This document shows positions 9,770 through 64,000 of a DNA stretch of 64,000 nt, piece after piece. Origin of the DNA: Octopus sinensis. Taxonomy: Eukaryota. Below the pieces are notes generated by a model, which made no database searches, had not been told where the DNA came from, and saw nothing but the letters and a program-made list of their open reading frames with translations. A program made the translations under genes and the position numbers. Positions within the stretch are counted from its first letter, which is position 1. Each line of letters starts with the position of its first letter. Location of the stretch: the NCBI RefSeq assembly GCF_006345805.1, contig NC_043000.1, positions 19,344,001-19,408,000 on the forward strand, written 5' to 3'.

Positions 9770-11098
9770 ATTTCATTTTTATCTTCCATTTGTTTAAATC
9801 ATTGTATTGTGGCCATGCCGTAGCACCAAGTTGAAGGGTTGGCTCAAACAAATTGAGCCCTAGAGCTTATTTTTCAATTTTGATTCTTATTATATCGGTT
9901 TGTTTTATATTGAACCGCTTAGTTATGAGGATATAAACAAACCACCATCGTCTGTCGAACAGTGGGATGGAGAACAAATACAAAGATAAACACACACACA
10001 CACAGACATCGCGCGCGCACACACAAATATACGACGAGTTTCTACTCAGTTGCCGTGTCCTAATTCACTCATAAAGCATTGGTCGCTTGGGTCTATTGTA
10101 GAAGATTTGTAGTCTGATCAATAAGTATCCGGACTGTTACCATAGTAACGAAGCTAAAGCATGCAAAGTAAAGCCGATTGATACAGATTGACCTTGAACT
10201 CTGCTCTGCATGTGCAATAAGTTTTAACGTTCTAGCTCATTTCCGCTGTTTACAGCAGTGCTTAGAAGGACGGTGTGTAGCGTGTGACCGTTGCATTGAC
10301 CATACAGAGAAAGTTGAGCAGAGACTCTGCATCAAATTTTGCCAAAAGCTTAGCGATACCTGCTTTGAAAACTTTGCCTACGCAAAGTTTTCAAAATGTT
10401 TTCATCGTTCTCAGCACAATGAAGGAGATCTTGTGCAACCGAGTGTCTTTTTGGTCAGTTGAAAGCAGTTTTGGCACAAACTTGGCAGACAATTGTCTCA
10501 TACACAAATCTTCAGTGATGATGGACTGAACTGAACCGTAACTAATCTGCACATCCTCTGATAACTCACGGATGGTGATTCGATGATTCCCCCACACAGC
10601 TGCACGCACATCTGCAATGTTTTTCTCAGTTCAGCTGGTTGCGAGTATCCCAGAACGTTTGTCACTATCGACATATTTTCGGCCATTTTGGAAATGTCTG
10701 AACCACTCGTACACTTGTGTGCGCATCATACACTTCTCTCCATATACATTCTGCAACCTAGCATAGGCTTCTGAGCAGGTATCACCATGACAAAGATCAC
10801 ACGCTGTGCTACGATCACACGCCGTGCTACGATCACACGCTAGACACGTTCCTTCCAACCACTGCTGTAAATAGGGAAAGGGTGCTAGGACGTTAAAACT
10901 TAATGCGTAGGCACATGAGAGTCCCGGGTCAATCTGTACTAATCGGCTTTACTCTGCGTGCTTTAACTTCGTTACTATGATGACAGTCCGGATACTTGAT
11001 CAGACCTCGTAGACGCCGAACGTGTCACGTAGCAAGACTCAACCGGAAACCATGTGGCGGCAAAGCGAGTTTCTTAACCACACAGCCATACCAGCGCC
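9770..11098 (-). mobile_element. Old, diverged SINE-B interrupted by the mariner
   Basis: SINE-B sequence stops at ~10105 (tattgtagaaga) and resumes at ~11012 (...aaccatgtgg...cacacagccatac). Confidence 0.6.
10112..11009. mobile_element. Fold-back mariner (Tc1/mariner) derivative, dead
   Basis: TA-flanked TIRs ((cgag)gtctgatcaa..gtatccggactg); minus strand encodes a broken transposase N-terminus (RTQVYEWFRHFQNGR...DKRSG; HRITIRELSEDVQISYGSVQSII...SAKFVPKLL); plus arm encodes EQRLCIKFCQKL. Confidence 0.88.
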
Positions 11099-16669: not shown

Positions 16670-16817
16670 TGTTATGTCGCACGTTCGGATGACTCCTACT
16701 CACTCTACTACACTGCTACTTAACTCTCACCGCTACTCTGCTACCCTGACGTCTAGACTTCTTCCACTATACGTATTGGGCTAGCCTACTTTATCGTCTG
16801 GGGGTGTCCACACAACA
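16670..16817 (-). mobile_element. Solo mini-LTR (family D)
   Basis: TGTTGTGTGGAC...GCGACATAACA on the minus strand; flanks taatc/tagtc (5-bp TSD with one mismatch). Confidence 0.75.
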
Positions 16818-18093: not shown

Positions 18094-18465
18094 ATATGAC
18101 TCAATACCAACCAAGAGGATGATATTTCTAAACTTCGATATTATGTTTTTGGCTTGCAAATGAGAAAATTGATGTAATTTCTAAATGTGTACTATACGTA
18201 CATTACGTACGTAATATACACATACATGCATACATTCATAGATACTTACATAAATACATATATGCTTATATACATATGTATGTGCATTATATATAACTAT
18301 GTATGTATGTATGTATGTATGTATGTATGTATGTATGTATGTATGTATGTATGCATGCATGTATGCATGTATGTATGTATGTATGTATGTATGTATGTAT
18401 GTATGTATGCATGTATGTATGTATGTATGTATGTATGTATGTATGTATGTATGTATGCATGTATG

Positions 18466-18692
18466 TGTTGTGTGGATGCCCCCAGACGATGAAGTAGGCT
18501 AGCCCAATACGTAGATATAAAGGGGGAAGCCTAGACGTCAAGAGAACAGAGCTGAGTAGCAGTCGAAGGTAGACTAGAAAAGAGTAGAGCAGAGTAGAGT
18601 TGAGTAGTAGAGGACATCCGAACGTGCGATATAACAGTGGCGACGAGGATTCCGTAGTTCACACAGCCAATGTGTAGTATTGCGATGTAACA
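18466..18692 (+). mobile_element. Family D long form: mini-LTR + PBS + short tail
   Basis: LTR 18466-18636 (TGTTG...ATAACA); TGGCGACGAGGAT at 18638-18650; ends tgtaaca; GTATG on both flanks. Confidence 0.75.
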
Positions 18693-19028
18693 GTATGTAT
18701 GTATGTATGTATGTATGTATTTATTTATGTATGTATGTATGTATGTATGTATGTATGTATGTATGTATGTATGTATGTATGTATGTATGTATGTATGTAT
18801 GTATGTATGTATGTATGTATGTATGTATGTATTATTTATGTATGTATGCATGTATGCATGTATGTATGTATGTATGTATGTATGTATGTATGTATGTATG
18901 TATGTATGTATGTATGTATGTATGTATGTATGTATGCATGCATGTATGCATGTATGTATGTATGTATGTATGTATGTATGTATGTATGCATGTATGTATG
19001 TATGTATGTATGTATGTATGCATGTATG

Positions 19029-19255
19029 TGTTGTGTGGATGCCCCCAGACGATGAAGTAGGCTAGCCCAATACGTAGATATAAAGGGGGAAGCCTAGACG
19101 TCAAGAGAACAGAGCTGAGTAGCAGTCGAAGGTAGACTAGAAAAGAGTAGAGCAGAGTAGAGTTGAGTAGTAGAGGACATCCGAACGTGCGATATAACAG
19201 TGGCGACGAGGATTCCGTAGTTCACACAGCCAATGTGTAGTATTGCGATGTAACA
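19029..19255 (+). mobile_element. Family D long form, duplicate copy
   Basis: Identical to 18466-18692. Confidence 0.75.
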
Positions 19256-19436
19256 GTATGTATGTATGTATGTATGTATGTATGTATTTATTTATGTATG
19301 TATGCATGTATGCATGCATGCATGTATGTATGTATGTATGTATGTATGTATGTATTTATTTATGTATGTATGCATGTATGCATGTATGTATGTATGTATG
19401 TATGTATGTATGTACGTATGTATGTATGTATGTATG

Positions 19437-19467
<31 letters not shown>

Positions 19468-19715
19468 TTATGTATGTGTAGGTTGTGTTTAGCACCAATT
19501 TAGCCTGTGAGCTTGATGAAAATAATACTGACGTAACATTTTGAGTCCATTACATAGTAGTGTGAAATCTAGTATGTTTGTCTTCTGTCTCTTTTCTAGG
19601 AAGAGGGCAATTCGTTAAAAGATATTTTGGACGCTATGCCAAGGGAGGTGTTTGATATTTTCTGTCGGATGATGAGTGGATAACTTTATGATTCATCATA
19701 GTTTTGTGTGTGTGT

Positions 19716-24720: not shown

Positions 24721-25110
24721 TGGGATGGAAGCACTCCGTCGGTTACGACGACGAGGGTTCCGGTTGATCCGAATCAACGGAACAGCCTGCTCGTGAAATT
24801 AACGTGTAAGTGGCTGAGCACTCCACAGACACGTGTACCCTTAACGTAGTTCTCGAGGATATTCAGCGTGACACAGAGAGTGACAAGGCCGGCCCTTTGA
24901 AATACAGGTACAAGAGAAACAGGAAGTAAGAGTGAAAGAAAGTTGTGGTGAAAGAGTACAGCAGGGATCACCACCATCCCCTGCCGGAGCCGCGTGGAGC
25001 TTTAGGTGTTTTCGCTCAATAAACACTCACAACGCCCGGTCTGGGAATCGAAACCGCGATCCTATGACCGCGAGTCCGCTGCCCTAACCACTGGGCCATT
25101 GCGCCTCCAC
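24721..25110 (-). mobile_element. SINE-A (A2) with TSD
   Basis: TSD gtgccgtgaaga at 24709-24720 and 25111-25122. Confidence 0.95.
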
Positions 25111-25509
25111 GTGCCGTGAAGAACAGATCTGAAGAAAGAAGCTGGTTATCTAGAAGAGTTCTGGAACTGAGTTTAGTGCAAGTTCTCCTGAAATCTTGGA
25201 GCAATGAAAACATTATTTCCGGTATAATGCGACTTGTCTTCTCTGGTTTTTCTCAAGAATATTTTCAAATACTTTTGAAACCTCGCATATTTACGACTGT
25301 TCTATCATACAGAAATAGATTCCTCAGGTTGTGCAAAGATAATCCGGAGATTTAGATAGATTTAATCCTTCTCTGTATCTCTTTAAATCTGAGGGTATTT
25401 TGTATGTAAGCATATGTATGTATATGTTTGTACATGTGTACACATAAAAGTGTGTGCGTGCTTATGTTCAAGATGATACATATACATATACTATATGCAC
25501 ACACACACA

Positions 25510-26857: not shown

Positions 26858-27247
26858 TGATGGAAGCACTCCGTCGGTTACGACGACGAGGGTTCCGGTT
26901 AATCCGAATCAACGGAACAGCCTGCTCGTGAAATGAACGTGTAAGTGGCTGAGCACTCCACAGACACGTGCACCCTTAACGTAGTTCTCGGGGATATTCA
27001 GCATGACACAGAGAATGACAAGGCCGGCCCTTTGAAATACAGGTACAACAGAAACAGGAAGTAAGAGTGAGAGAAAGTTGTGGTGAAAGAGTACAGCAGG
27101 GACCACCACCATGCCCCGCCGGAGCCTCGTGGAGCTTTTTAGGTGTTTTCGCTCAATAAACACTCACAACGCCCGGTCTGGGAATCGAAAGCGCGATCCT
27201 ATGACCGCGAGTCCGCTGCCCTGACCACTGGGCCATTGCGCCTCCAC
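26858..27247 (-). mobile_element. SINE-A (A2)
   Basis: Full-length match; no clear TSD. Confidence 0.92.
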
Positions 27248-30960: not shown

Positions 30961-31301
30961 TATCTACTATTTATCTAAACTCTCGTCTCAGCCATGCGGC
31001 CGAGGTCATGCTGGAGCACCACTATCGTCTTTCTGACTTTCTCAGTCTGGGTCTTTCGCATCATCACTCCTGTCTGTGCCTTTTCCCCAGCTGTTGGTAC
31101 GTTTGAATTATAATTGAGTTTGATTCCGCTGCCCTCCTCTGTACCTCATGTCGGGCTGTTGGTTCATCCGGTTTTGTAGAGAGGAGGATGTTTAATTCCT
31201 TTTTGAAGACATCTACTTCCACCTTTCGCAAATTTCTTAACTTTTGTAGCAGGGCATTGAAAAGCTGTAGGCCATTGAACCCTAGACTATTGCAATACCG
31301 T

Positions 31302-31672
31302 GGAGGCGCAATGGCTCAGTGGTTAGGGCAGCGGACTCGCGGTCGTAGGATCGCGGTTTCGATTCCCAGACCGGGCGTCGTGAGTGTTTATCGAGCGAAA
31401 ACACGTAAAGCTCCACGAGGCTCCGGCAGGGGATGGTGGTGATCCCTGCTGTACTCTTTCACCACAACTTTCTCTCACTCTTACTTCCTGTTTCTGTTGT
31501 ACCTGTATTTCAAAGGGCCGGCCTTGTCACTCTCTGTGTCACGCTGAATATCCCCGAGAACTACGTTAAGGGTACACGTGTCTGTGGAGTGCTCAGCCAC
31601 TTACACGTTAATATCACGAGCAGGCTGTTCCGTTGATCGGATCAACCGGAACCCTCTTCGTCGTAACCGACG
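31302..31672 (+). mobile_element. SINE-A (A2), 3' end fused to a Helitron
   Basis: Ends at cgtaaccgacg, then continues as Helitron sequence cagcgaaaattttg. Confidence 0.92.
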
Positions 31673-37810: not shown

Positions 37811-38192
37811 GAGGCGCAATGGCCCAGTGGTTAGGGCAGTGGACTCGCGGTCATAGGATCGCGGTTTCGATTCCCAGACCGGGCGTTGTGAGTGTTTATT
37901 GAGCGAAAACACCTAAAGCTCCACGAGCCTCCGGCAGGGGATGGTGGTGATCCCTGCTGTACTCTTTCACCACAACTTTCTCTCACTCTTACTTCCTGTT
38001 TCTGTTGTACCTTGTATTTCAAGGGGCAGGCCTTGTCACTCTCTGTGTCACGCTGAATATCCCCGAGAACTACGTTAAGGGTACACGTGTCTGTGGAGTG
38101 CTCAACCACTTACACGTTAATTTCACGAGCAGGCTGTTCCGTTGATCGGATCAACCGGAACCCTCGTCGTCGTAACCGACAGAGTGCTTCCA
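37811..38192 (+). mobile_element. SINE-A (A2) with TSD
   Basis: TSD gataaagcagtc at 37799-37810 and 38193-38204. Confidence 0.95.
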
Positions 38193-47257: not shown

Positions 47258-48730
47258 AGTCTCAACTCATGGCTCACCACTTCATCCTACGCGGATATCC
47301 CCTCACCACTATCCACACCGCTCTTGCCAGAGCATCTGTTCTCTCCCCCTGAACCCGCCCCACCGTCTCCCGCCTCCCATTTTCCCTTACCTACCACCCC
47401 ACCACCCTACCTCTCCAGCGTACCATTCTCCGAGCCTTTCGGCGACTCCAGTCCGACCTCTTTACTTCGCACATCTTCCCTAACCGACCCCTCCCCTCCT
47501 TCAAACGAGCCCACAACCTAAGAGACCTCTTGGTCCACAGCTTCTTCCCTAACCCAGCCTCCCAACCCGGATCATTCCCCTGCTTCCGCCCACACTGCCG
47601 CACTTGCCCTTACCTTTCCAACACCACCCTCCTCACCAACACCCATCATCGACCCTATCACATCACTGACTCCTTCACCTGCACTTCTACCAATATCATC
47701 TACTGCATCTCGTGCTCTCTCTGCCCTTCTCTATACGTCGGGCAAACGGACGCCGCTTGGTTGACCGGTTCGCGGAACACCTCCGAGACACCTGACTCGG
47801 CAATGACACCCCGGTCTCGCGCCATTTCCGCTCTACCGGTCACTCTTTGTAACGCCTGTCCGTGTTCGGACTGTCCTTGCACAGAAGCCATCTGGACTCC
47901 CGTTTGCGCCGTGAACAGGGATTAATCTTCTCTCTTCGCTCCTTTCCGCCATATGGGCTCAACTCTCCTCCCCTCGCCTCTCTCCCCCTCATACCTACAT
48001 CCTCCCACCAACCTTTCCTCTCTTGTTCCGACTCCTACTTCTGCTCTTCACTCCTACTCTCCTCTCTTCTCTTCATACCTTCTCCTTCCCCCCTTATAGT
48101 CACCCCTCCCTCATAAGCCCACCCCATCTTCCTATGCCCCCTATCCCACCCCACCCAATCCCTTACACCCACTCGCACATACTCCACCTCTACTCCATCC
48201 CCCTCTACTCACATACTCCACCTCTACCCCCACCCTCAATCAAACCCACATACCACCATTGCTTTCCCCACTCTCGCCTTCCCACCTCCCAACACCTTCA
48301 CACCATACCACACAACACATCAACCACACAACACATCAACCACACAACACACCACCACGCACGCATCAGCACTGACCACTTCCCAGACCCACATTTTCAC
48401 ACCTACACATACACACACGCACACGTCAAGATCACCAGCCCTTTGCCACACGCACATACACACTCTCAAATGCACGCACGCGCACCTTCGTTTTGGGATC
48501 ACCAATACTTTATTATTTCCCCTTCTTCCTGCCTTTCCTGTATGACCCTTCAGTCCGGCATTCTCTGTGATAGATCTCTAGCCACTACACTTTCTTTATT
48601 TTCTCTCCTTGTTTCTGTGTTCCTTTCTGTGGAAGAGCGTAGGCTTTTTCACTTCCCGAGAGTTATATACTATACATCTGCTTGTTGTCTACACCACCTG
48701 TCTCCGTCTTTTTCTTTGTTAATTCTCCCC
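47258..48730 (+). mobile_element. 5'-truncated Penelope-like element (Neptune-type Cys linker), dead
   Basis: HFILRGYP...LTYHP...FKRAHNLRDLLVHS...CFRPHCRTCPY...FTCTSTNIIYCISCSLCPSLYVGQT/RRLVDRFAEHLRD (GIY-YIG endonuclease); C-rich 3' UTR; Penelope-type terminus. Confidence 0.9.
47263..47990 (+). pseudogene. Penelope ORF remnant (linker + GIY-YIG endonuclease)
   Basis: In-frame TGA at ~47350, frameshift at ~47750, further TGA/TAA stops. Confidence 0.85.
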
Positions 48731-53274: not shown

Positions 53275-53655
53275 TGTTGTGTGGACGCCCCCAGACGATG
53301 AAGCAGGCTAGCCCAATACGTAGATATATATTTCTTTATTGCCCACAGGGGGCTAAACATAGAGGGGGAAAACAAGGACAGACAAAGGGATTAAGTCGAT
53401 TACATCGACCCCAGTGCGTAACTGGTACTTAATTTATCGACCCCGAAAGGATGAAAGGCAAAGTCGACCTCGGCGGAATTTGAACTCACAACGTAACGCA
53501 GACGAAATACCGCTAAGCATTTCGCCCGGCGTGCTAACGTTTCTGCCAGCTCACCGCCTTCCCAATACGTAGATATAGAGGGAGAAGTCTAGACGTCCAG
53601 GAGTCGAGAGTAGGAGTGGAGTTGAGTAGAAGGCATCTGAACCTGCGACATAACA
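53275..53655 (+). mobile_element. Solo mini-LTR (family D) interrupted by SINE-C1
   Basis: ATTAG|TGTTGTGTGGAC...GCGACATAACA|ATTAG, perfect 5-bp TSD. Confidence 0.82.
53329..53560 (-). mobile_element. SINE-C1 full length with 17-bp TSD
   Basis: TSD cccaatacgtagatata at 53312-53328 and 53561-53577. Confidence 0.95.
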
Positions 53656-56783: not shown

Positions 56784-57244
56784 ATGTATATATACATGCG
56801 TGCATTTTATATAATTTTATAAATTTAGTCTCGTAACAGCCAGTCTAAGTCACTGAATGATTCTATGCTAAATGATTCTATGCTGAAGAACCATCCAACT
56901 GCGGAGAAGTAAATTAACAATCTTCGGATATGACTAAAAGACAAAGTACAGCATAAGCTCTTTGTTATACATGTTCCTTTTCATGATTTGCGACATTCAT
57001 TTTTTGTATGCGAAATAATACGTTTTGGCAGACTCGCATGCAAAATATATCGAAATGTAAATACTTTGAAAGATTACTTTAACGATATTTAAAAATTTAG
57101 ATGTTTTTTCTCATGCAAGTGTTCAAAATTACAATGAGAAGACTTTCAAACGGTGCTCTGAAAGAATTCCCGTACAACGATTACATTACAGTTTTACGAG
57201 AACTGCCTCTGTCTGTTCCTATAAGTAACTAGCTTATGTCTTTA

Positions 57245-57512
57245 TTTTGTGTGGACGCCCCCAGATGATAAAGTAGGCTAGCCCAATACGTAGATATAGA
57301 GGGAGAAGCCTAGACGTCAGGTGCACAAGAAATGTGTGGAGATAGTATTGACCCACCAGTTGTGGATTTAATAGAAATTGAATCATTGATGAAATACTAC
57401 TAAAAAGAAAATAAGTATGTTAAATTGACAAGGAAAAAAAAGAGAAAAAAAAAAAAAAAGAAAAAAGAAAAGGTAAAAAAGGAAACGGAGGAAAAAAGGA
57501 AAAAAAGAGAGA

Positions 57513-57592
<80 letters not shown>

Positions 57593-58263
57593 GTGTGTTT
57601 GTGTTTCTCCCCCTAGCATTGCTTGACAACCGATGCTGGTGTGTTTACGACCCCGTCACTTAGCGGTTCGGCCAAAGAGACCGATAGAATAAGTACTGGG
57701 CTTACAAAGAATAAGTCCCGGGGTCGATTTGCTCGACTAAAAGGCGGTGCTCCAGCACGGCCGCAGTCAAATGACTGAAACAAGTAAAAGAGATAAAAGA
57801 GATAAAAGAGAAAAGAGTAAAATGTTTATGGTCATGTTTAAAAATTATGGAAAAAAGAAGAACAATTATAGAAAATATATATAACGGTTCAAATACTTGC
57901 AATGGTATGTAACACGATAATTAATTGTTATGTAAATACATGATAAAAATGGACGTAAAAAAATATTAATGGTACTGCATGTGATGAGGGGCGCATGCAG
58001 CCATTTATAACCTCATTGTTATATAATCATCTCATTCATATTCGTTTTATGTATTGTCCCCTCTGTAGTGTTCTGTCTGTCCTTGTTTGTCCCGCTCTAT
58101 TTTGAGCCCTTGTGGCTAATAAAGAAATAGCACAGCTGAGTAGTAGACTAGAACGGAGTAGAGTCGACTAGAGTTGAGTAGAGGACATCCGAACGTGCGA
58201 CATGACAGTGGCAACGAGGATTTCGTAGCTCACACAGCCACTGTGTTGTATTGCGACATAACA
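57245..58263 (+). mobile_element. Family D long form split by an ~810-bp insertion
   Basis: Left LTR half 57245-57320, right half + PBS (tggcaacgaggat) + tail 58131-58263; TSD CTTTA at 57240-57244 and 58264-58268. Confidence 0.78.
57590..57820 (+). mobile_element. SINE-B 3' half (nested)
   Basis: Consensus match. Confidence 0.88.
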
Positions 58264-58283
58264 CTTTACAAACACGATTATAT

Positions 58284-58670
58284 GTGGAAGCACTCCGTCG
58301 GTTACGACGACGAGGGTTCCGGTTGATCCGAATCAACGGAACAGCCTGCTCGTGAAATTAACGTGTAAGTGGCTGAGCACTCCACAGACACGTGTACCCT
58401 TAACATAGTTCTCGGGGATATTCAGCGTGACACAGAGAGTGACAAGGCCGGCCCCTTGAAATACAGGTACAACAGAAACAGGAAGTAAGAGTGAGAGAAA
58501 GTTGTGGTGAAAGAGTACAGCAGGGATCACCACCATCCCCTGCCGGAGCCTCGTGGAGCTTTTTATGTGTTTTCGCTCAATAAACACTCACAACGCCCGG
58601 TCTGGGAATCGAAACCGCGATCCTATGACCGCGAGTCCGCTGCCCTAACCACTGGGCCATTGCGCCTCCT
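58284..58670 (-). mobile_element. SINE-A (A2) with TSD
   Basis: TSD cacgattatat at 58273-58283 and 58671-58681. Confidence 0.95.
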
Positions 58671-62379: not shown

Positions 62380-64000
62380 TGTTCTTTATTAGCCACACAG
62401 GGCTGCACACAGATAGAACAAATTACAAGGTAGAGCTTTTCTTTTGAAGTATTAAAAAAAAAAAAAAAAAAAAAAGGAAGGGGGAGGTTCGATCAAAAGG
62501 GATCGTAAAAGGAGAGAAAGAGGACAAAAATAAGGGGGTTAAAAAAAAAAAAAAGAAAAAAAGAAAAAAAAAAGGGGGGGGGGAGAGGAAAAAAAAATGA
62601 TCAATAGGGATCGTTATCACAGAAATGTCAATATGAAGTGTAAAGGGGAGGACAGGTGAGGTTTACCCGTGGAAAGAAAAGCCTGCGGAAAAGACCACGG
62701 TAACTCGGTCAATGACGTCACATTTTATTTCTTTTTTTTTTTTTTTTTTTTTTTTGCAAATAAGCAACTCTCTGTTTTCGATTTCTGGGTTCATAGGACT
62801 ATGCTCAAGGTGGCTTCGTCATTCATACGTGCCATTCTTGCTACATTCACCCATCTTTTTTAAAACATTCGCTAGACAAAACTTGCCTCTCTACTCTCAC
62901 TTTCCTTTTCAAGTGGTACTTGAAGAAGTTGATGAGAGATTGACCAGAGAGGAAAGTGTTTGTCTCCAATCCTTTCAGACGCGTCCACCAGATACATTCT
63001 TTCGCCATAGCCACAAGGATGATGAAAATAGCTCTTCCTTCCCGTTTGAAGGAAGGAGGCGTGACAATATTGACGATAGACTCAGCTGATAAACCGACTC
63101 GTCCCACACGTGACAGCAGTTGTTCGACATAAGCCCACAGGTCGGAAATTGTTGGACACTGAACGAGTGCGTGCAGAACGGTTTCGTCGCTCTGACCGCA
63201 TCTCGGGCAGGTCGGCCCCGTGTTTCTCGAGCCGTGTCTGTAGAGCTTATCCCGAACGGGTAGCGCTTCTCGGTAGCACTGCCAGGCCAGGGATCTCTGG
63301 AAGTTGTCCATGGGCCCTGGCCCGAAAGTCGTCCCGAACAGGGGGTCAGGTACTCCTCGTCGACGTCCAGGTTCGCCCCGAGCTCGTCGTCGTACCTCCC
63401 CTCCACTAAACCCCTATAGAATGCTTTGGTTGTTGAAGTCACTTAAGGTCGACCCAGGACGGCAGAGTTGCTTGAGAGCAACGCGACACTCGCGGTGCCA
63501 TTCGCCCTTCCTCGGCCTCTTTTGATCCACGACTGCAGTTCGGTCATGGAGACGAGCTGCGGGAAAGCGTGCCTCACAAACGGCGACCACACCTGTTCAC
63601 CGTCGTCTACATAGAGCCAGATGTCGCAGTCTCAGCGCGTGTCTGCGCATCATCAACCACGGCATGCCCAGCCCTCCTTTTAACGGGTGTTGACAGCAAT
63701 GGATCGCCTGACCATCGGGACGCATCCTTTCCACAAGAAGCGAAAGAGGATGCGTTGTAGTTTGGTGATGGTAGGGTCGGGACAAGGTATGACGGTCAGG
63801 CGGTAGTAGATGACGGACGCGATGTACGTGTTCGCCACCTCACGCTCGACCTTTTAGGGACAGTTTCCTCTCGGCCCATTGCCGGCGAGAGTGACCACCC
63901 TACTCGTTATCTCGTTCCAGTTCTTCTCCACTTGGAGGTCCGACCAAACCAGACCCCGAGCAACTCAACCGGGCCGTCGGTCCAGCGTCCCACGACGGAG
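62379..64000 (-). mobile_element. Tx1/L1-clade LINE 3' portion (frameshifted ORF2 C-terminus + 3' UTR); continues past the window
   Basis: RKLSLKGR/VANTYIASVIYYRL/LWKG post-RT motifs; zf-RVT-like CPRCGQSDETVLHALVQC; GC-rich; several frameshifts; AATAAAGAAC end. Confidence 0.88.

What the first reader, a model, noticed from the sequence alone, without database searches (positions are those of the whole stretch)
18466..18692. Asymmetric 227-bp mini LTR element: one LTR + tRNA-Ser PBS + vestigial second end
Seen: a 171-bp TGTTG...ATAACA unit, then TGGCGACGAGGAT, then ~42 bp ending tgtagtattgcgatgtaaca (tgttgtattgcgacataaca in the 58-kb copy), which looks like LTR start and LTR end fused into 20 bp. 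Known: that 13-mer is complementary to the 3' end of tRNA-Ser(GCU) (...AUCCUCGUCG-CCA), as in LTR primer-binding sites, and TG...CA ends with 5-bp TSDs are integrase hallmarks. The same asymmetry occurs in two independent insertions (flanks GTATG and CTTTA). Normal reverse transcription should equalise LTRs, and no polypurine tract is evident. So it may move by an unusual route, e.g. DNA-level mobilisation by a Ginger-like integrase acting on TGT...ACA ends, or an atypical TRIM cycle. It is smaller than typical TRIMs.
Basis: partly seen in the sequence, partly recalled or inferred. Interest (0 to 1): 0.75.

Follow-up and report, generated by a model that had tools for sequence, protein, structure and literature searches.

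The report
One-LTR mini retroelement relic in octopus
A 227-bp piece of an octopus LTR retrotransposon (one 171-bp LTR, a tRNA-Ser primer site, 30 bp, then a repeat of the LTR's last 12 bp) really was inserted as one unit at two places, but it is most simply a lone LTR of a variant family whose LTR got lengthened by a copying slip, not proof of a new way of moving.

Summary
The described sequence is there. The unit at 18466-18692 consists of a 171-bp LTR (TGTTG...TAACA), a G, a 13-mer, a 30-nt spacer and a 12-nt repeat of the LTR's own end. The 13-mer exactly complements the last 13 nt of tRNA-Ser(GCU). The window holds three copies. Copy B (19029-19255) is only a recent segmental duplicate of A. 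Copy C (57245-58263) is independent: it has a clean CTTTA duplication and is split by a later 802-bp nested insert. Two solo LTRs of the same family (16670-16817, 53275-53655) also carry 5-bp duplications. A and C share every junction and form their own LTR subfamily, so the asymmetric architecture was inherited and integrated as a unit by an integrase. No standard reverse-transcription route can copy "one full LTR plus a 12-20 bp stub", and there is no polypurine tract. My best explanation (about 0.5) is that the whole 227 bp is itself an LTR. One early minus-strand template switch would have duplicated U5-end, PBS and leader, and A and C would be ordinary solo LTRs of that subfamily. A self-propagating one-LTR element remains possible (about 0.17). 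A Ginger-like DNA route has no support. The deciding genome-wide census could not be run, because no octopus genome was searchable by DNA.

The parts
18466..18692 (+). Copy A of the 227-bp unit (whole)
18466..18636 (+). 171-bp LTR body (L): TGTTG...TAACA, with CCAAT at nt 39 and TATAAA at nt 51 (motifs seen in the sequence only)
   Evidence: the nhmmer profile of four LTRs hits here at E=6e-47
18638..18650 (+). PBS-like 13-mer TGGCGACGAGGAT, one base (G, 18637) after the LTR; complementary to the 3' end of tRNA-Ser(GCU)
   Evidence: found only in the element copies, expected 0.05; published tRNA-Ser(GCT) primer
18651..18680 (+). 30-nt spacer (presumed leader). It is neither purine-rich nor tRNA-like.
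   Evidence: p=0.2-0.6 against the tRNA complement; no Rfam match
18681..18692 (+). 12-nt direct repeat (u) of the LTR's own terminus: TGCGATGTAACA here, TGCGATATAACA at 18625-18636
18461..18465 (.). GTATG, left candidate target-site duplication of A (right copy at 18693-18697), inside (GTAT)n
   Evidence: the microsatellite phase is restored only with a 1, 5 or 9-nt duplication
19029..19255 (+). Copy B: 100% identical to A, and the identity extends into the flanks. It is a 563-bp-period segmental duplicate, not an independent insertion.
57245..57327 (+). Copy C, LTR nt 1-83. The CTTTA target duplication lies at 57240-57244.
57328..58134 (.). Later nested insert in copy C (A-rich tract, (TA)n, SINE pieces) including one copy of its GCACA flank repeat
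58135..58263 (+). Copy C, rest of the LTR (to 58207), G, PBS TGGCAACGAGGAT (58209-58221), spacer, and u TGCGACATAACA (58252-58263). The CTTTA duplication lies at 58264-58268.
16670..16817 (-). Solo LTR S1 of the same family (148 bp), flanks GACTA / GATTA, not followed by a PBS
53275..53655 (+). Solo LTR S2 of the same family, with target duplication ATTAG/ATTAG. It is interrupted by a SINE (53329-53560) that has a 17-bp duplication, CCCAATACGTAGATATA.

Best explanation
**What it is.** The 227-bp unit is a relic of an LTR retrotransposon family in an octopus genome, and the whole unit is itself an LTR of a variant subfamily. Copies A and C are ordinary solo LTRs of that subfamily.

**Origin (inferred).**
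1. In one replication cycle of a normal element (171-bp LTR, G, PBS, leader), tRNA-Ser(GCU)-primed minus-strand DNA copied only the last ~12 nt of U5.
2. It then switched template to a point 30 nt downstream of the PBS and copied leader, PBS and U5 a second time.
3. It then finished normally.
4. Plus-strand strong-stop DNA copies everything up to the tRNA primer. Both LTRs of the product therefore became L + G + PBS + 30 nt + the 12-nt U5 end.
5. The cDNA's right end is always the sequence made first from the primer. That explains why the unit ends in a perfect integrase-ready copy of the LTR terminus.

**Propagation (inferred).** Such elements replicate normally whenever the primer sits on the PBS copy that follows the long LTR.

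**Present state.** Integrase inserted them with 5-bp duplications (shown). Later LTR-LTR recombination left solo 227-bp LTRs (inferred). A was then duplicated by unequal exchange in its microsatellite, and C was hit by nested insertions (both shown). The copies are now old and inert.
For: **The unit was inserted whole.** C has CTTTA/CTTTA exactly at TTTTG...TAACA, and A fits a 5-bp duplication by microsatellite phase.

**The architecture is inherited, not re-made.**
- A and C share every junction.
- They differ at 7 of 56 positions in the 56-bp PBS-to-tail segment (printed side by side).
- Their LTRs are each other's closest relatives: 89.8% identity, against 79-86% to solo LTRs S1 and S2, with shared blocks.

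**Solo LTRs are a common fate here.** Two solo LTRs of the same family with 5-bp duplications lie in the same 64 kb.

**Features that fit an LTR reading.**
- There is no polypurine tract before the tail. A solo LTR needs none.
- The tail's solid part is exactly the LTR's terminal 12 nt, as expected if it is the first DNA made from the primer.
- The PBS is a 13/13 match to the tRNA-Ser(GCU) 3' end and sits one base after ...ACA.

**Precedent.** Premature first-strand transfers with junctions in U5, and other aberrant strand transfers, are documented in HIV-1 proviruses (PMC12657518). Template-switch products that are still integrated with target duplications are documented in plants (PMC1950507).
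Against: - No full-length element with 227-bp units at both ends, and no unit followed by G+TGGCGACGAGG, was seen. Only 64 kb plus 22 kb of Octopus DNA could be examined.
- An LTR that carries a usable PBS inside it should misprime often, so such a subfamily should be handicapped.
- One position co-varies between the LTR end and the tail: GCGAT/GCGAT in A and GCGAC/GCGAC in C. This would be expected if both were copied from one template at each cycle, which this model does not predict. About 0.09 such sites are expected by chance (my own estimate).
- The TGTTGT at the start of the tail is left as coincidence.
Confidence: 0.5

Rival explanations
1. This is a self-propagating one-LTR miniature element. 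The asymmetric 227-bp DNA is itself the transposing unit. It would be copied by a non-canonical route and then joined by a helper element's integrase, which needs only the two terminal att sequences. Possible routes are an early minus-strand transfer that uses the 12-nt terminal repeat as a surrogate R on an RNA starting at LTR nt 1, or integration of an LTR-length strong-stop duplex.
For: - Two independent insertions have the same architecture and exact TG...CA ends with 5-bp duplications.
- Both observed members of the A/C subfamily are of the 227-bp type.
- The C/T covariation between the LTR end and the tail fits re-copying of both from one template in each cycle.
Against: - Every reverse-transcription scheme I worked through gives two equal LTRs, either 381-bp or 76-bp forms, and neither is present.
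- Otherwise an RNA starting exactly at LTR nt 1 is needed, whereas the CCAAT/TATA-like motifs at nt 39-56 would put a start near nt 80 (inference).
- There is no polypurine tract.
- Only two independent copies exist, and both are old (about 10% diverged).
- No external copies could be collected.
Confidence: 0.17
2. The unit is a defective cDNA made afresh each time, or a deletion made after integration. In one version, a template-switch hotspot during minus- or plus-strand synthesis of normal elements repeatedly yields LTR+PBS+30 nt+U5 end. In the other, normal elements already carry the 12-mer in their leader, and illegitimate recombination between that 12-mer and the one ending the 3' LTR deletes the rest.
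For: - Aberrant strand transfers during both strands' synthesis give deleted but integrated proviruses in HIV-1, including junctions in U5 and next to the PBS (PMC12657518).
- The tail is exactly a 12-nt repeat of the LTR terminus, which is the kind of homology such events use.
Against: - A and C share identical junctions, including the non-homologous ...GTAT|TGCGA join, and they form their own LTR subfamily. This points to inheritance rather than recurrence.
- Recombination over 12 bp should be far rarer than over the 171-bp LTRs, yet 2 of 2 members of this subfamily are of the 227-bp type.
Confidence: 0.1
3. The unit is mobilised at the DNA level by a Ginger-like (integrase-derived) transposase that acts on the TGT...ACA ends, so the unit behaves as a MITE.
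For: The termini are TGTTG / TGTTA (inverted) and the target duplication is 5 bp.
Against: - The inverted repeat is only 4-5 nt, no more than any LTR has.
- The same ends occur on the plain solo LTRs.
- No transposase or integrase ORF is in the window.
- The PBS and the direct U5-end repeat are signatures of reverse transcription, not of cut-and-paste.
Confidence: 0.03

Closest known systems
Solo LTRs of LTR retrotransposons (products of LTR-LTR recombination)
   Same: A single terminal-repeat unit with TG...CA ends, flanked by a 5-bp target duplication, non-coding, with no polypurine tract. Plain solo LTRs of this very family lie in the same window.
   Different: This unit contains a complete PBS and a second copy of its own last 12 nt. 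A full-length parent with such LTRs has not been seen.
TRIMs and SMART elements (miniature non-autonomous LTR retrotransposons; SMART is 292 bp, PMC3281118; bivalve TRIMs, PMC6934838; Helenus/Ajax, PMC10886601)
   Same: Tiny, non-coding, with a PBS next to the LTR, target duplications, and presumed dependence on a helper element.
   Different: Those have two equal LTRs and a polypurine tract. This unit has one full LTR plus a 12-20 bp stub and no polypurine tract. No tRNA-like or 5S-like sequence is in its LTR.
Defective proviruses from aberrant strand transfer (HIV-1, PMC12657518) and complex LTR elements from template switching (Triticeae, PMC1950507)
   Same: Odd architectures created by RT template switches near U5/PBS, which are still integrated with normal ends and target duplications.
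   Different: Those are one-off products. Here the architecture is shared by two independent insertions, so it was propagated.
Retroviral vectors with two primer-binding sites (Voronin and Pathak, MLV/HIV dual-PBS vectors; recalled from memory, not checked here)
   Same: Initiation at a downstream PBS makes the stretch between U5 and that PBS part of the repeat. This is the logic of the proposed long-LTR subfamily.
   Different: Those are engineered constructs.
Ginger1/Ginger2 DNA transposons (Bao, Kapitonov, Jurka 2010; recalled from memory)
   Same: TGT...ACA termini, short target duplications, and an integrase-related enzyme.
   Different: Ginger elements have long terminal inverted repeats and encode a transposase. 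Here the inverted repeat is 4-5 nt and the internal features are those of reverse transcription.

Membership tests
LTR retrotransposon (any superfamily) | Terminal repeat with TG...CA ends and short inverted termini | tested here: met
   TGTTG...TAACA in A, B, S1 and S2; TTTTG...TAACA in C
LTR retrotransposon (any superfamily) | 4-6 bp target-site duplication | tested here: met
   CTTTA/CTTTA (C), ATTAG/ATTAG (S2), GACTA/GATTA (S1); A fits 5 bp by microsatellite phase
LTR retrotransposon (any superfamily) | PBS complementary to a tRNA 3' end just after the 5' LTR | tested here: met
   13/13 nt match to the human tRNA-Ser(GCT) primer sequence, one base after ...ACA. The octopus tRNA was not available.
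LTR retrotransposon (any superfamily) | Polypurine tract just before the 3' LTR | tested here: not met
   The 15 nt before the tail, TTCACACAGCCAATG, are not purine-rich
LTR retrotransposon (any superfamily) | Two equal LTRs; gag/pol genes or a known autonomous partner | tested here: not met
   There is one 171-bp LTR plus a 12-20 bp stub. No RT, integrase or gag ORF is in the window. A partner could not be searched for.
TRIM / SMART | Two terminal direct repeats of about 100-250 bp around a short internal domain with PBS and PPT | tested here: not met
   Only the PBS is present. There is no second full repeat and no PPT.
Solo LTR | A single LTR flanked directly by the target duplication | tested here: met
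   The 227-bp unit is bounded exactly by the duplications. The condition is that the whole unit is an LTR.
Solo LTR | The same sequence serves as both LTRs of full-length elements in the genome | not testable with these tools
   No octopus genome was searchable by DNA. Pattern scans of metagenome, prokaryote and viral collections were empty. A 22-kb O. sinensis locus has no copy.
Ginger-like DNA transposon / MITE | Terminal inverted repeats of tens of bp | tested here: not met
   Only TGTT(G/A) is shared between the two ends
Ginger-like DNA transposon / MITE | A matching transposase-encoding master element | not testable with these tools
Small-RNA-derived TRIMs (Cassandra, Helenus, Ajax) | tRNA-like or 5S-like sequence inside the LTR | tested here: not met
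   There was no Rfam match even at E<=10, and ARAGORN found nothing.

The most novel reading that the evidence does not exclude
A 227-bp retroelement with a single full LTR multiplies as an asymmetric unit. The route might be an early minus-strand transfer that uses a 12-nt copy of the U5 terminus as a stand-in for R, or integration of an LTR-length strong-stop or heteroduplex cDNA. This would make it the smallest LTR-type mobile element known, and one that breaks the rule that reverse transcription equalises the two LTRs.
Probability: 0.15. Interest if true: 0.7.

Novelty: new variant of a known kind. Interest (0 to 1): 0.35.

Why it matters
**If the plain reading holds.** This is a neat natural record of an RT template switch that lengthened an LTR by swallowing its own PBS and leader. 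It is useful for transposon annotation, because a tool that expects two equal LTRs with a PBS outside them will mis-call it. Otherwise it is ordinary.

**If the unit really amplifies with only one LTR.** It would show that integrase-ready DNA can be made and spread without the two-jump scheme. It would also push the lower size limit of LTR-type mobile elements below the 292-bp SMART elements. That would interest people who work on retroelement replication and on defective proviruses.

Tried and rejected
**Attempts to collect more copies.**
1. I translated the open minus-strand frame of the element and searched 5.8 billion predicted proteins, to pull in other genomic copies through gene calls. 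Nothing was found.
2. Exact-pattern scans with the U5-end+PBS motif and with a conserved 18-24-mer of the LTR found nothing in JGI metagenomes, GTDB genomes or IMG/VR.
3. I tried to sample the same genome through transposon proteins of the window. A LINE ORF's best named hit was Argonauta hians. A mariner remnant led to one Octopus sinensis protein. Its 22-kb locus shares SINEs at up to 94% identity with the window but has no copy of this LTR or PBS. An ENA hit was a 929-bp low-coverage contig and was of no use.

**Ideas tested on the element itself.**
4. The spacer as read-through into the tRNA primer (as in HIV-1 delayed second-strand transfer): rejected. The match to the tRNA-Ser complement stops at 13 nt, and the next 30 nt score no better than shuffles (p=0.2-0.6). 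Rfam finds no tRNA.
5. A structured RNA, ribozyme or small-RNA promoter in the unit: no Rfam family matched, and the fold z-score is only -1.5. The bacterial promoter/terminator scan is irrelevant here.
6. A and B as the two LTRs of one young element: rejected. Identity continues into the flanks on both sides, and A is not followed by a PBS.
7. Symmetrical relatives (381-bp or 76-bp forms), or further copies of the 56-bp tail: none in the window or in L001.

**Literature.**
8. A search for natural LTRs that contain a second PBS retrieved only the bipartite 5'/3' PBS of Drosophila Gypsy, which is a different thing.

Full report
**Setting.** The window is AT-rich animal DNA, crowded with microsatellites and SINEs.
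- A LINE-type ORF has its best named relative in Argonauta hians.
- A mariner remnant led to a protein of Octopus sinensis.
- The 22-kb O. sinensis locus fetched through that protein shares the window's SINE families at up to 94% identity.
- The window therefore comes from an Octopus or a close relative. ARAGORN finds no tRNA gene in it.

**The observation.**

| Part | Coordinates | Sequence |
|---|---|---|
| LTR (L), 171 bp | 18466-18636 | TGTTG...GCGATATAACA |
| single base | 18637 | G |
| PBS-like 13-mer | 18638-18650 | TGGCGACGAGGAT |
| spacer, 30 nt | 18651-18680 | TCCGTAGTTCACACAGCCAATGTGTAGTAT |
| terminal repeat (u), 12 nt | 18681-18692 | TGCGATGTAACA |

- u repeats the LTR's own last 12 nt, TGCGATATAACA.
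- The 13-mer, allowing one mismatch, occurs three times in 64 kb, only in copies of this element, against 0.05 expected.
- A published primer for human tRNA-Ser(GCT) reads TGGCGACGAGGATGGGATTCG... (PMC9072684). The 13-mer is therefore the exact complement of the tRNA's last 13 nt including CCA. It sits one base after ...ACA, the classic PBS position. The complementarity stops at 13 nt.

**Copies in the window** (BLASTN and an nhmmer profile):

| Copy | Coordinates | Type | Flanks |
|---|---|---|---|
| A | 18466-18692 (+) | 227-bp unit | GTATG / GTATG, inside (GTAT)n |
| B | 19029-19255 (+) | 227-bp unit, duplicate of A | same as A |
| C | 57245-58263 (+) | 227-bp unit, split by a nested insert | CTTTA / CTTTA |
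| S1 | 16670-16817 (-) | LTR only, 148 bp | GACTA / GATTA |
| S2 | 53275-53655 (+) | LTR only, with a SINE inside | ATTAG / ATTAG |

- B is 100% identical to A, and the identity continues 39 bp to the left and 28 bp to the right. B is a 563-bp-period segmental duplicate made inside the (GTAT)n tract, not an independent insertion.
- C is split after LTR nt 83 by an 802-bp nested insert of A-rich sequence, (TA)n and SINE pieces, flanked by GCACA. It begins TTTTG instead of TGTTG.
- The SINE inside S2 has a 17-bp duplication of its own.
- A's GTATG is uninformative as a string. However, the microsatellite comes back into phase only if the element plus 1, 5 or 9 nt is taken out, which fits a 5-bp duplication.
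- The family is therefore a genuine integrase-inserted LTR family. The 227-bp unit was inserted as a unit at least twice (A/B and C).

**Is the architecture inherited?**
- A and C share every junction.
- Their 56-bp PBS-to-tail segments differ at 7 positions (printed side by side).
- Their LTRs are the closest pair: 89.8% identity, against 79-86% to S1 and S2. They also share blocks that S1 and S2 lack.
- The join between spacer and tail (...GTAT|TGCGA...) is not a simple microhomology join. Two independent identical deletions are therefore unlikely.
- The asymmetric form was propagated.

**The tail.**
- The LTR-end half is solid. The 12-mer TGCGACATAACA occurs exactly only at the ends of S1 and S2 and in C's tail. 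With one mismatch it also marks the LTR ends of A, B and C.
- The LTR-start half is 6 nt (TGTTGT in C, TGTAGT in A) in GT-rich sequence. I treat it as possibly chance.

**Missing signals.**
- The 15 nt before the tail are not purine-rich, so there is no PPT.
- The LTR has CCAAT at nt 39 and TATAAA at nt 51 in A (TATAGA or TATAGT in the other copies). This would put a transcription start near nt 80 and R inside the part that is missing from the tail. This is an inference from sequence only.

**What the spacer is not.**
- HIV-1 proviruses show delayed second-strand transfer that copies 7-54 nt of the tRNA primer beyond the PBS (PMC12657518). I tested that idea here.
- The 30-nt spacer aligns to the known continuation of the tRNA-Ser complement no better than shuffled versions do (p=0.2-0.6).
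- Rfam finds no tRNA or other family in the unit even at E<=10.
- The unit has no unusual fold (z=-1.5).
- The spacer is most likely the element's own leader.

**Mechanism.** I walked through the two-jump scheme for an RNA made from L-G-PBS-spacer-u.
- With normal initiation, the strong-stop DNA has no R to land on.
- If it lands on the TGTTGT, the product is L-PBS-spacer-L (381 bp).
- If u acts as R, the product is a 76-bp element with 20-bp repeats.
- Neither form is present.
- The asymmetric form is reproduced only if the RNA starts exactly at LTR nt 1 and the left end is made by run-off. Nothing supports that.

One known kind of error does explain it without a new route.
1. Primer extension from the PBS copies just G plus the last ~12 nt of U5.
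2. It then switches to a site 30 nt downstream of the PBS.
3. The minus strand then carries u-spacer-PBS-u-U5-R.
4. After the normal first jump, the PPT-primed plus-strand strong-stop DNA copies all of it up to the tRNA.
5. Both LTRs of the product become L+G+PBS+spacer+u, 227 bp in all, followed by the real PBS.

Consequences of this model:
- The cDNA's right end is by construction the U5 terminus that integrase needs. This explains the 12-nt repeat.
- Such elements replicate normally from the outer PBS.
- Their solo LTRs would look exactly like A and C: flanked by 5-bp duplications, with no PPT, and forming their own LTR subfamily.
- Premature first-strand transfer with junctions in U5 is documented (PMC12657518). 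So are template-switch products that still integrate with target duplications (PMC1950507).

I put this reading at about 0.5.

**Rivals.**
- **A truly self-propagating one-LTR element (about 0.17).** It is favoured by one observation that the solo-LTR model does not predict. The LTR end and the tail carry the same variant within each copy (GCGAT/GCGAT in A, GCGAC/GCGAC in C), as if both were re-copied from one template. This is one site, and I estimate about 0.09 such sites by chance. Each copy also has one site where the two repeats differ.
- **Recurrent aberrant cDNA, or post-integration deletion between 12-nt repeats (about 0.1).** It is disfavoured by the shared non-homologous junction. 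It is also disfavoured because both members of the subfamily are the long form, although 171-bp homology should recombine far more often than 12 bp.
- **Ginger-like DNA mobilisation (about 0.03).** It has only the TGTT(G/A) termini in its favour, which every LTR has. The window has no transposase, RT or integrase ORF.

**What could not be done.**
- The decisive census could not be run. It would ask whether 227-bp units come in pairs around an internal region and are followed by a PBS, or whether only isolated units of many ages exist.
- No octopus assembly is searchable by DNA with these tools.
- The ORF trick and four collection scans were empty.
- Only one 22-kb O. sinensis locus could be fetched, and it lacks the family.

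**Verdict.**
- The LTR/PBS/integrase reading is supported.
- The claim of an unusual transposition route is not supported, and it is not needed.
- This is a new structural variant of a known kind. Interest is moderate to low unless the census shows that it amplifies alone.

Noticed in passing
window 18290-19480: A long (GTAT)n microsatellite with GCAT variants holds copies A and B. A 563-bp segment (the element plus microsatellite) is duplicated in tandem with no differences in the 294 bp compared, which points to recent unequal exchange inside the repeat.
   Followed up: partly
window 57328-58134: An 802-bp composite (A-rich tract, (TA)n, a SINE 85-91% identical to many window copies, and other SINE ends) is nested in copy C's LTR and flanked by GCACA.
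   Followed up: partly
window 53329-53577: A tRNA-derived SINE is inserted in solo LTR S2 with a 17-bp target duplication, CCCAATACGTAGATATA. This is typical of LINE-mediated insertion.
   Followed up: partly
window 24749-24762, 26884-26897, 38156-38169 (-), 58308-58321: The head of another repeat family (...ACGACGACGAGGGTTCCGGTTGATCCG...) matches the element's PBS region CGACGAGGATTCCG at 13 of 14 nt. This may be chance (E=3), or it may be a SINE head derived from the same tRNA-Ser. The family recurs as 220-340-bp repeats, for example at 24773-25111, 31299-31637 and 58332-58571.
   Followed up: no
window 10394-10948 (-): A frameshifted N-terminal remnant of a mariner/Mos1-type transposase (HTH domains). 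Its relatives include a snail (Bradybaena similaris), a spider (Araneus ventricosus) and Octopus sinensis 'protein GVQW3'.
   Followed up: partly
window 47353-47922 (+) and 62850-63413 (-): There is an ORF with a GIY-YIG-like motif (IYCISCSLCPSLYVGQT), which may be the tail of a Penelope-like element. There is also a LINE reverse-transcriptase C-terminal fragment (zf-RVT, PF13966), 63% identical to an Argonauta hians protein.
   Followed up: partly
L002 (ENA ERZ23872314, NODE_87141): A metagenome assembly in ENA carries a low-coverage 929-bp contig encoding a LINE fragment 79% identical to the window's. This is probably cephalopod host DNA in a microbiome sample.
   Followed up: no
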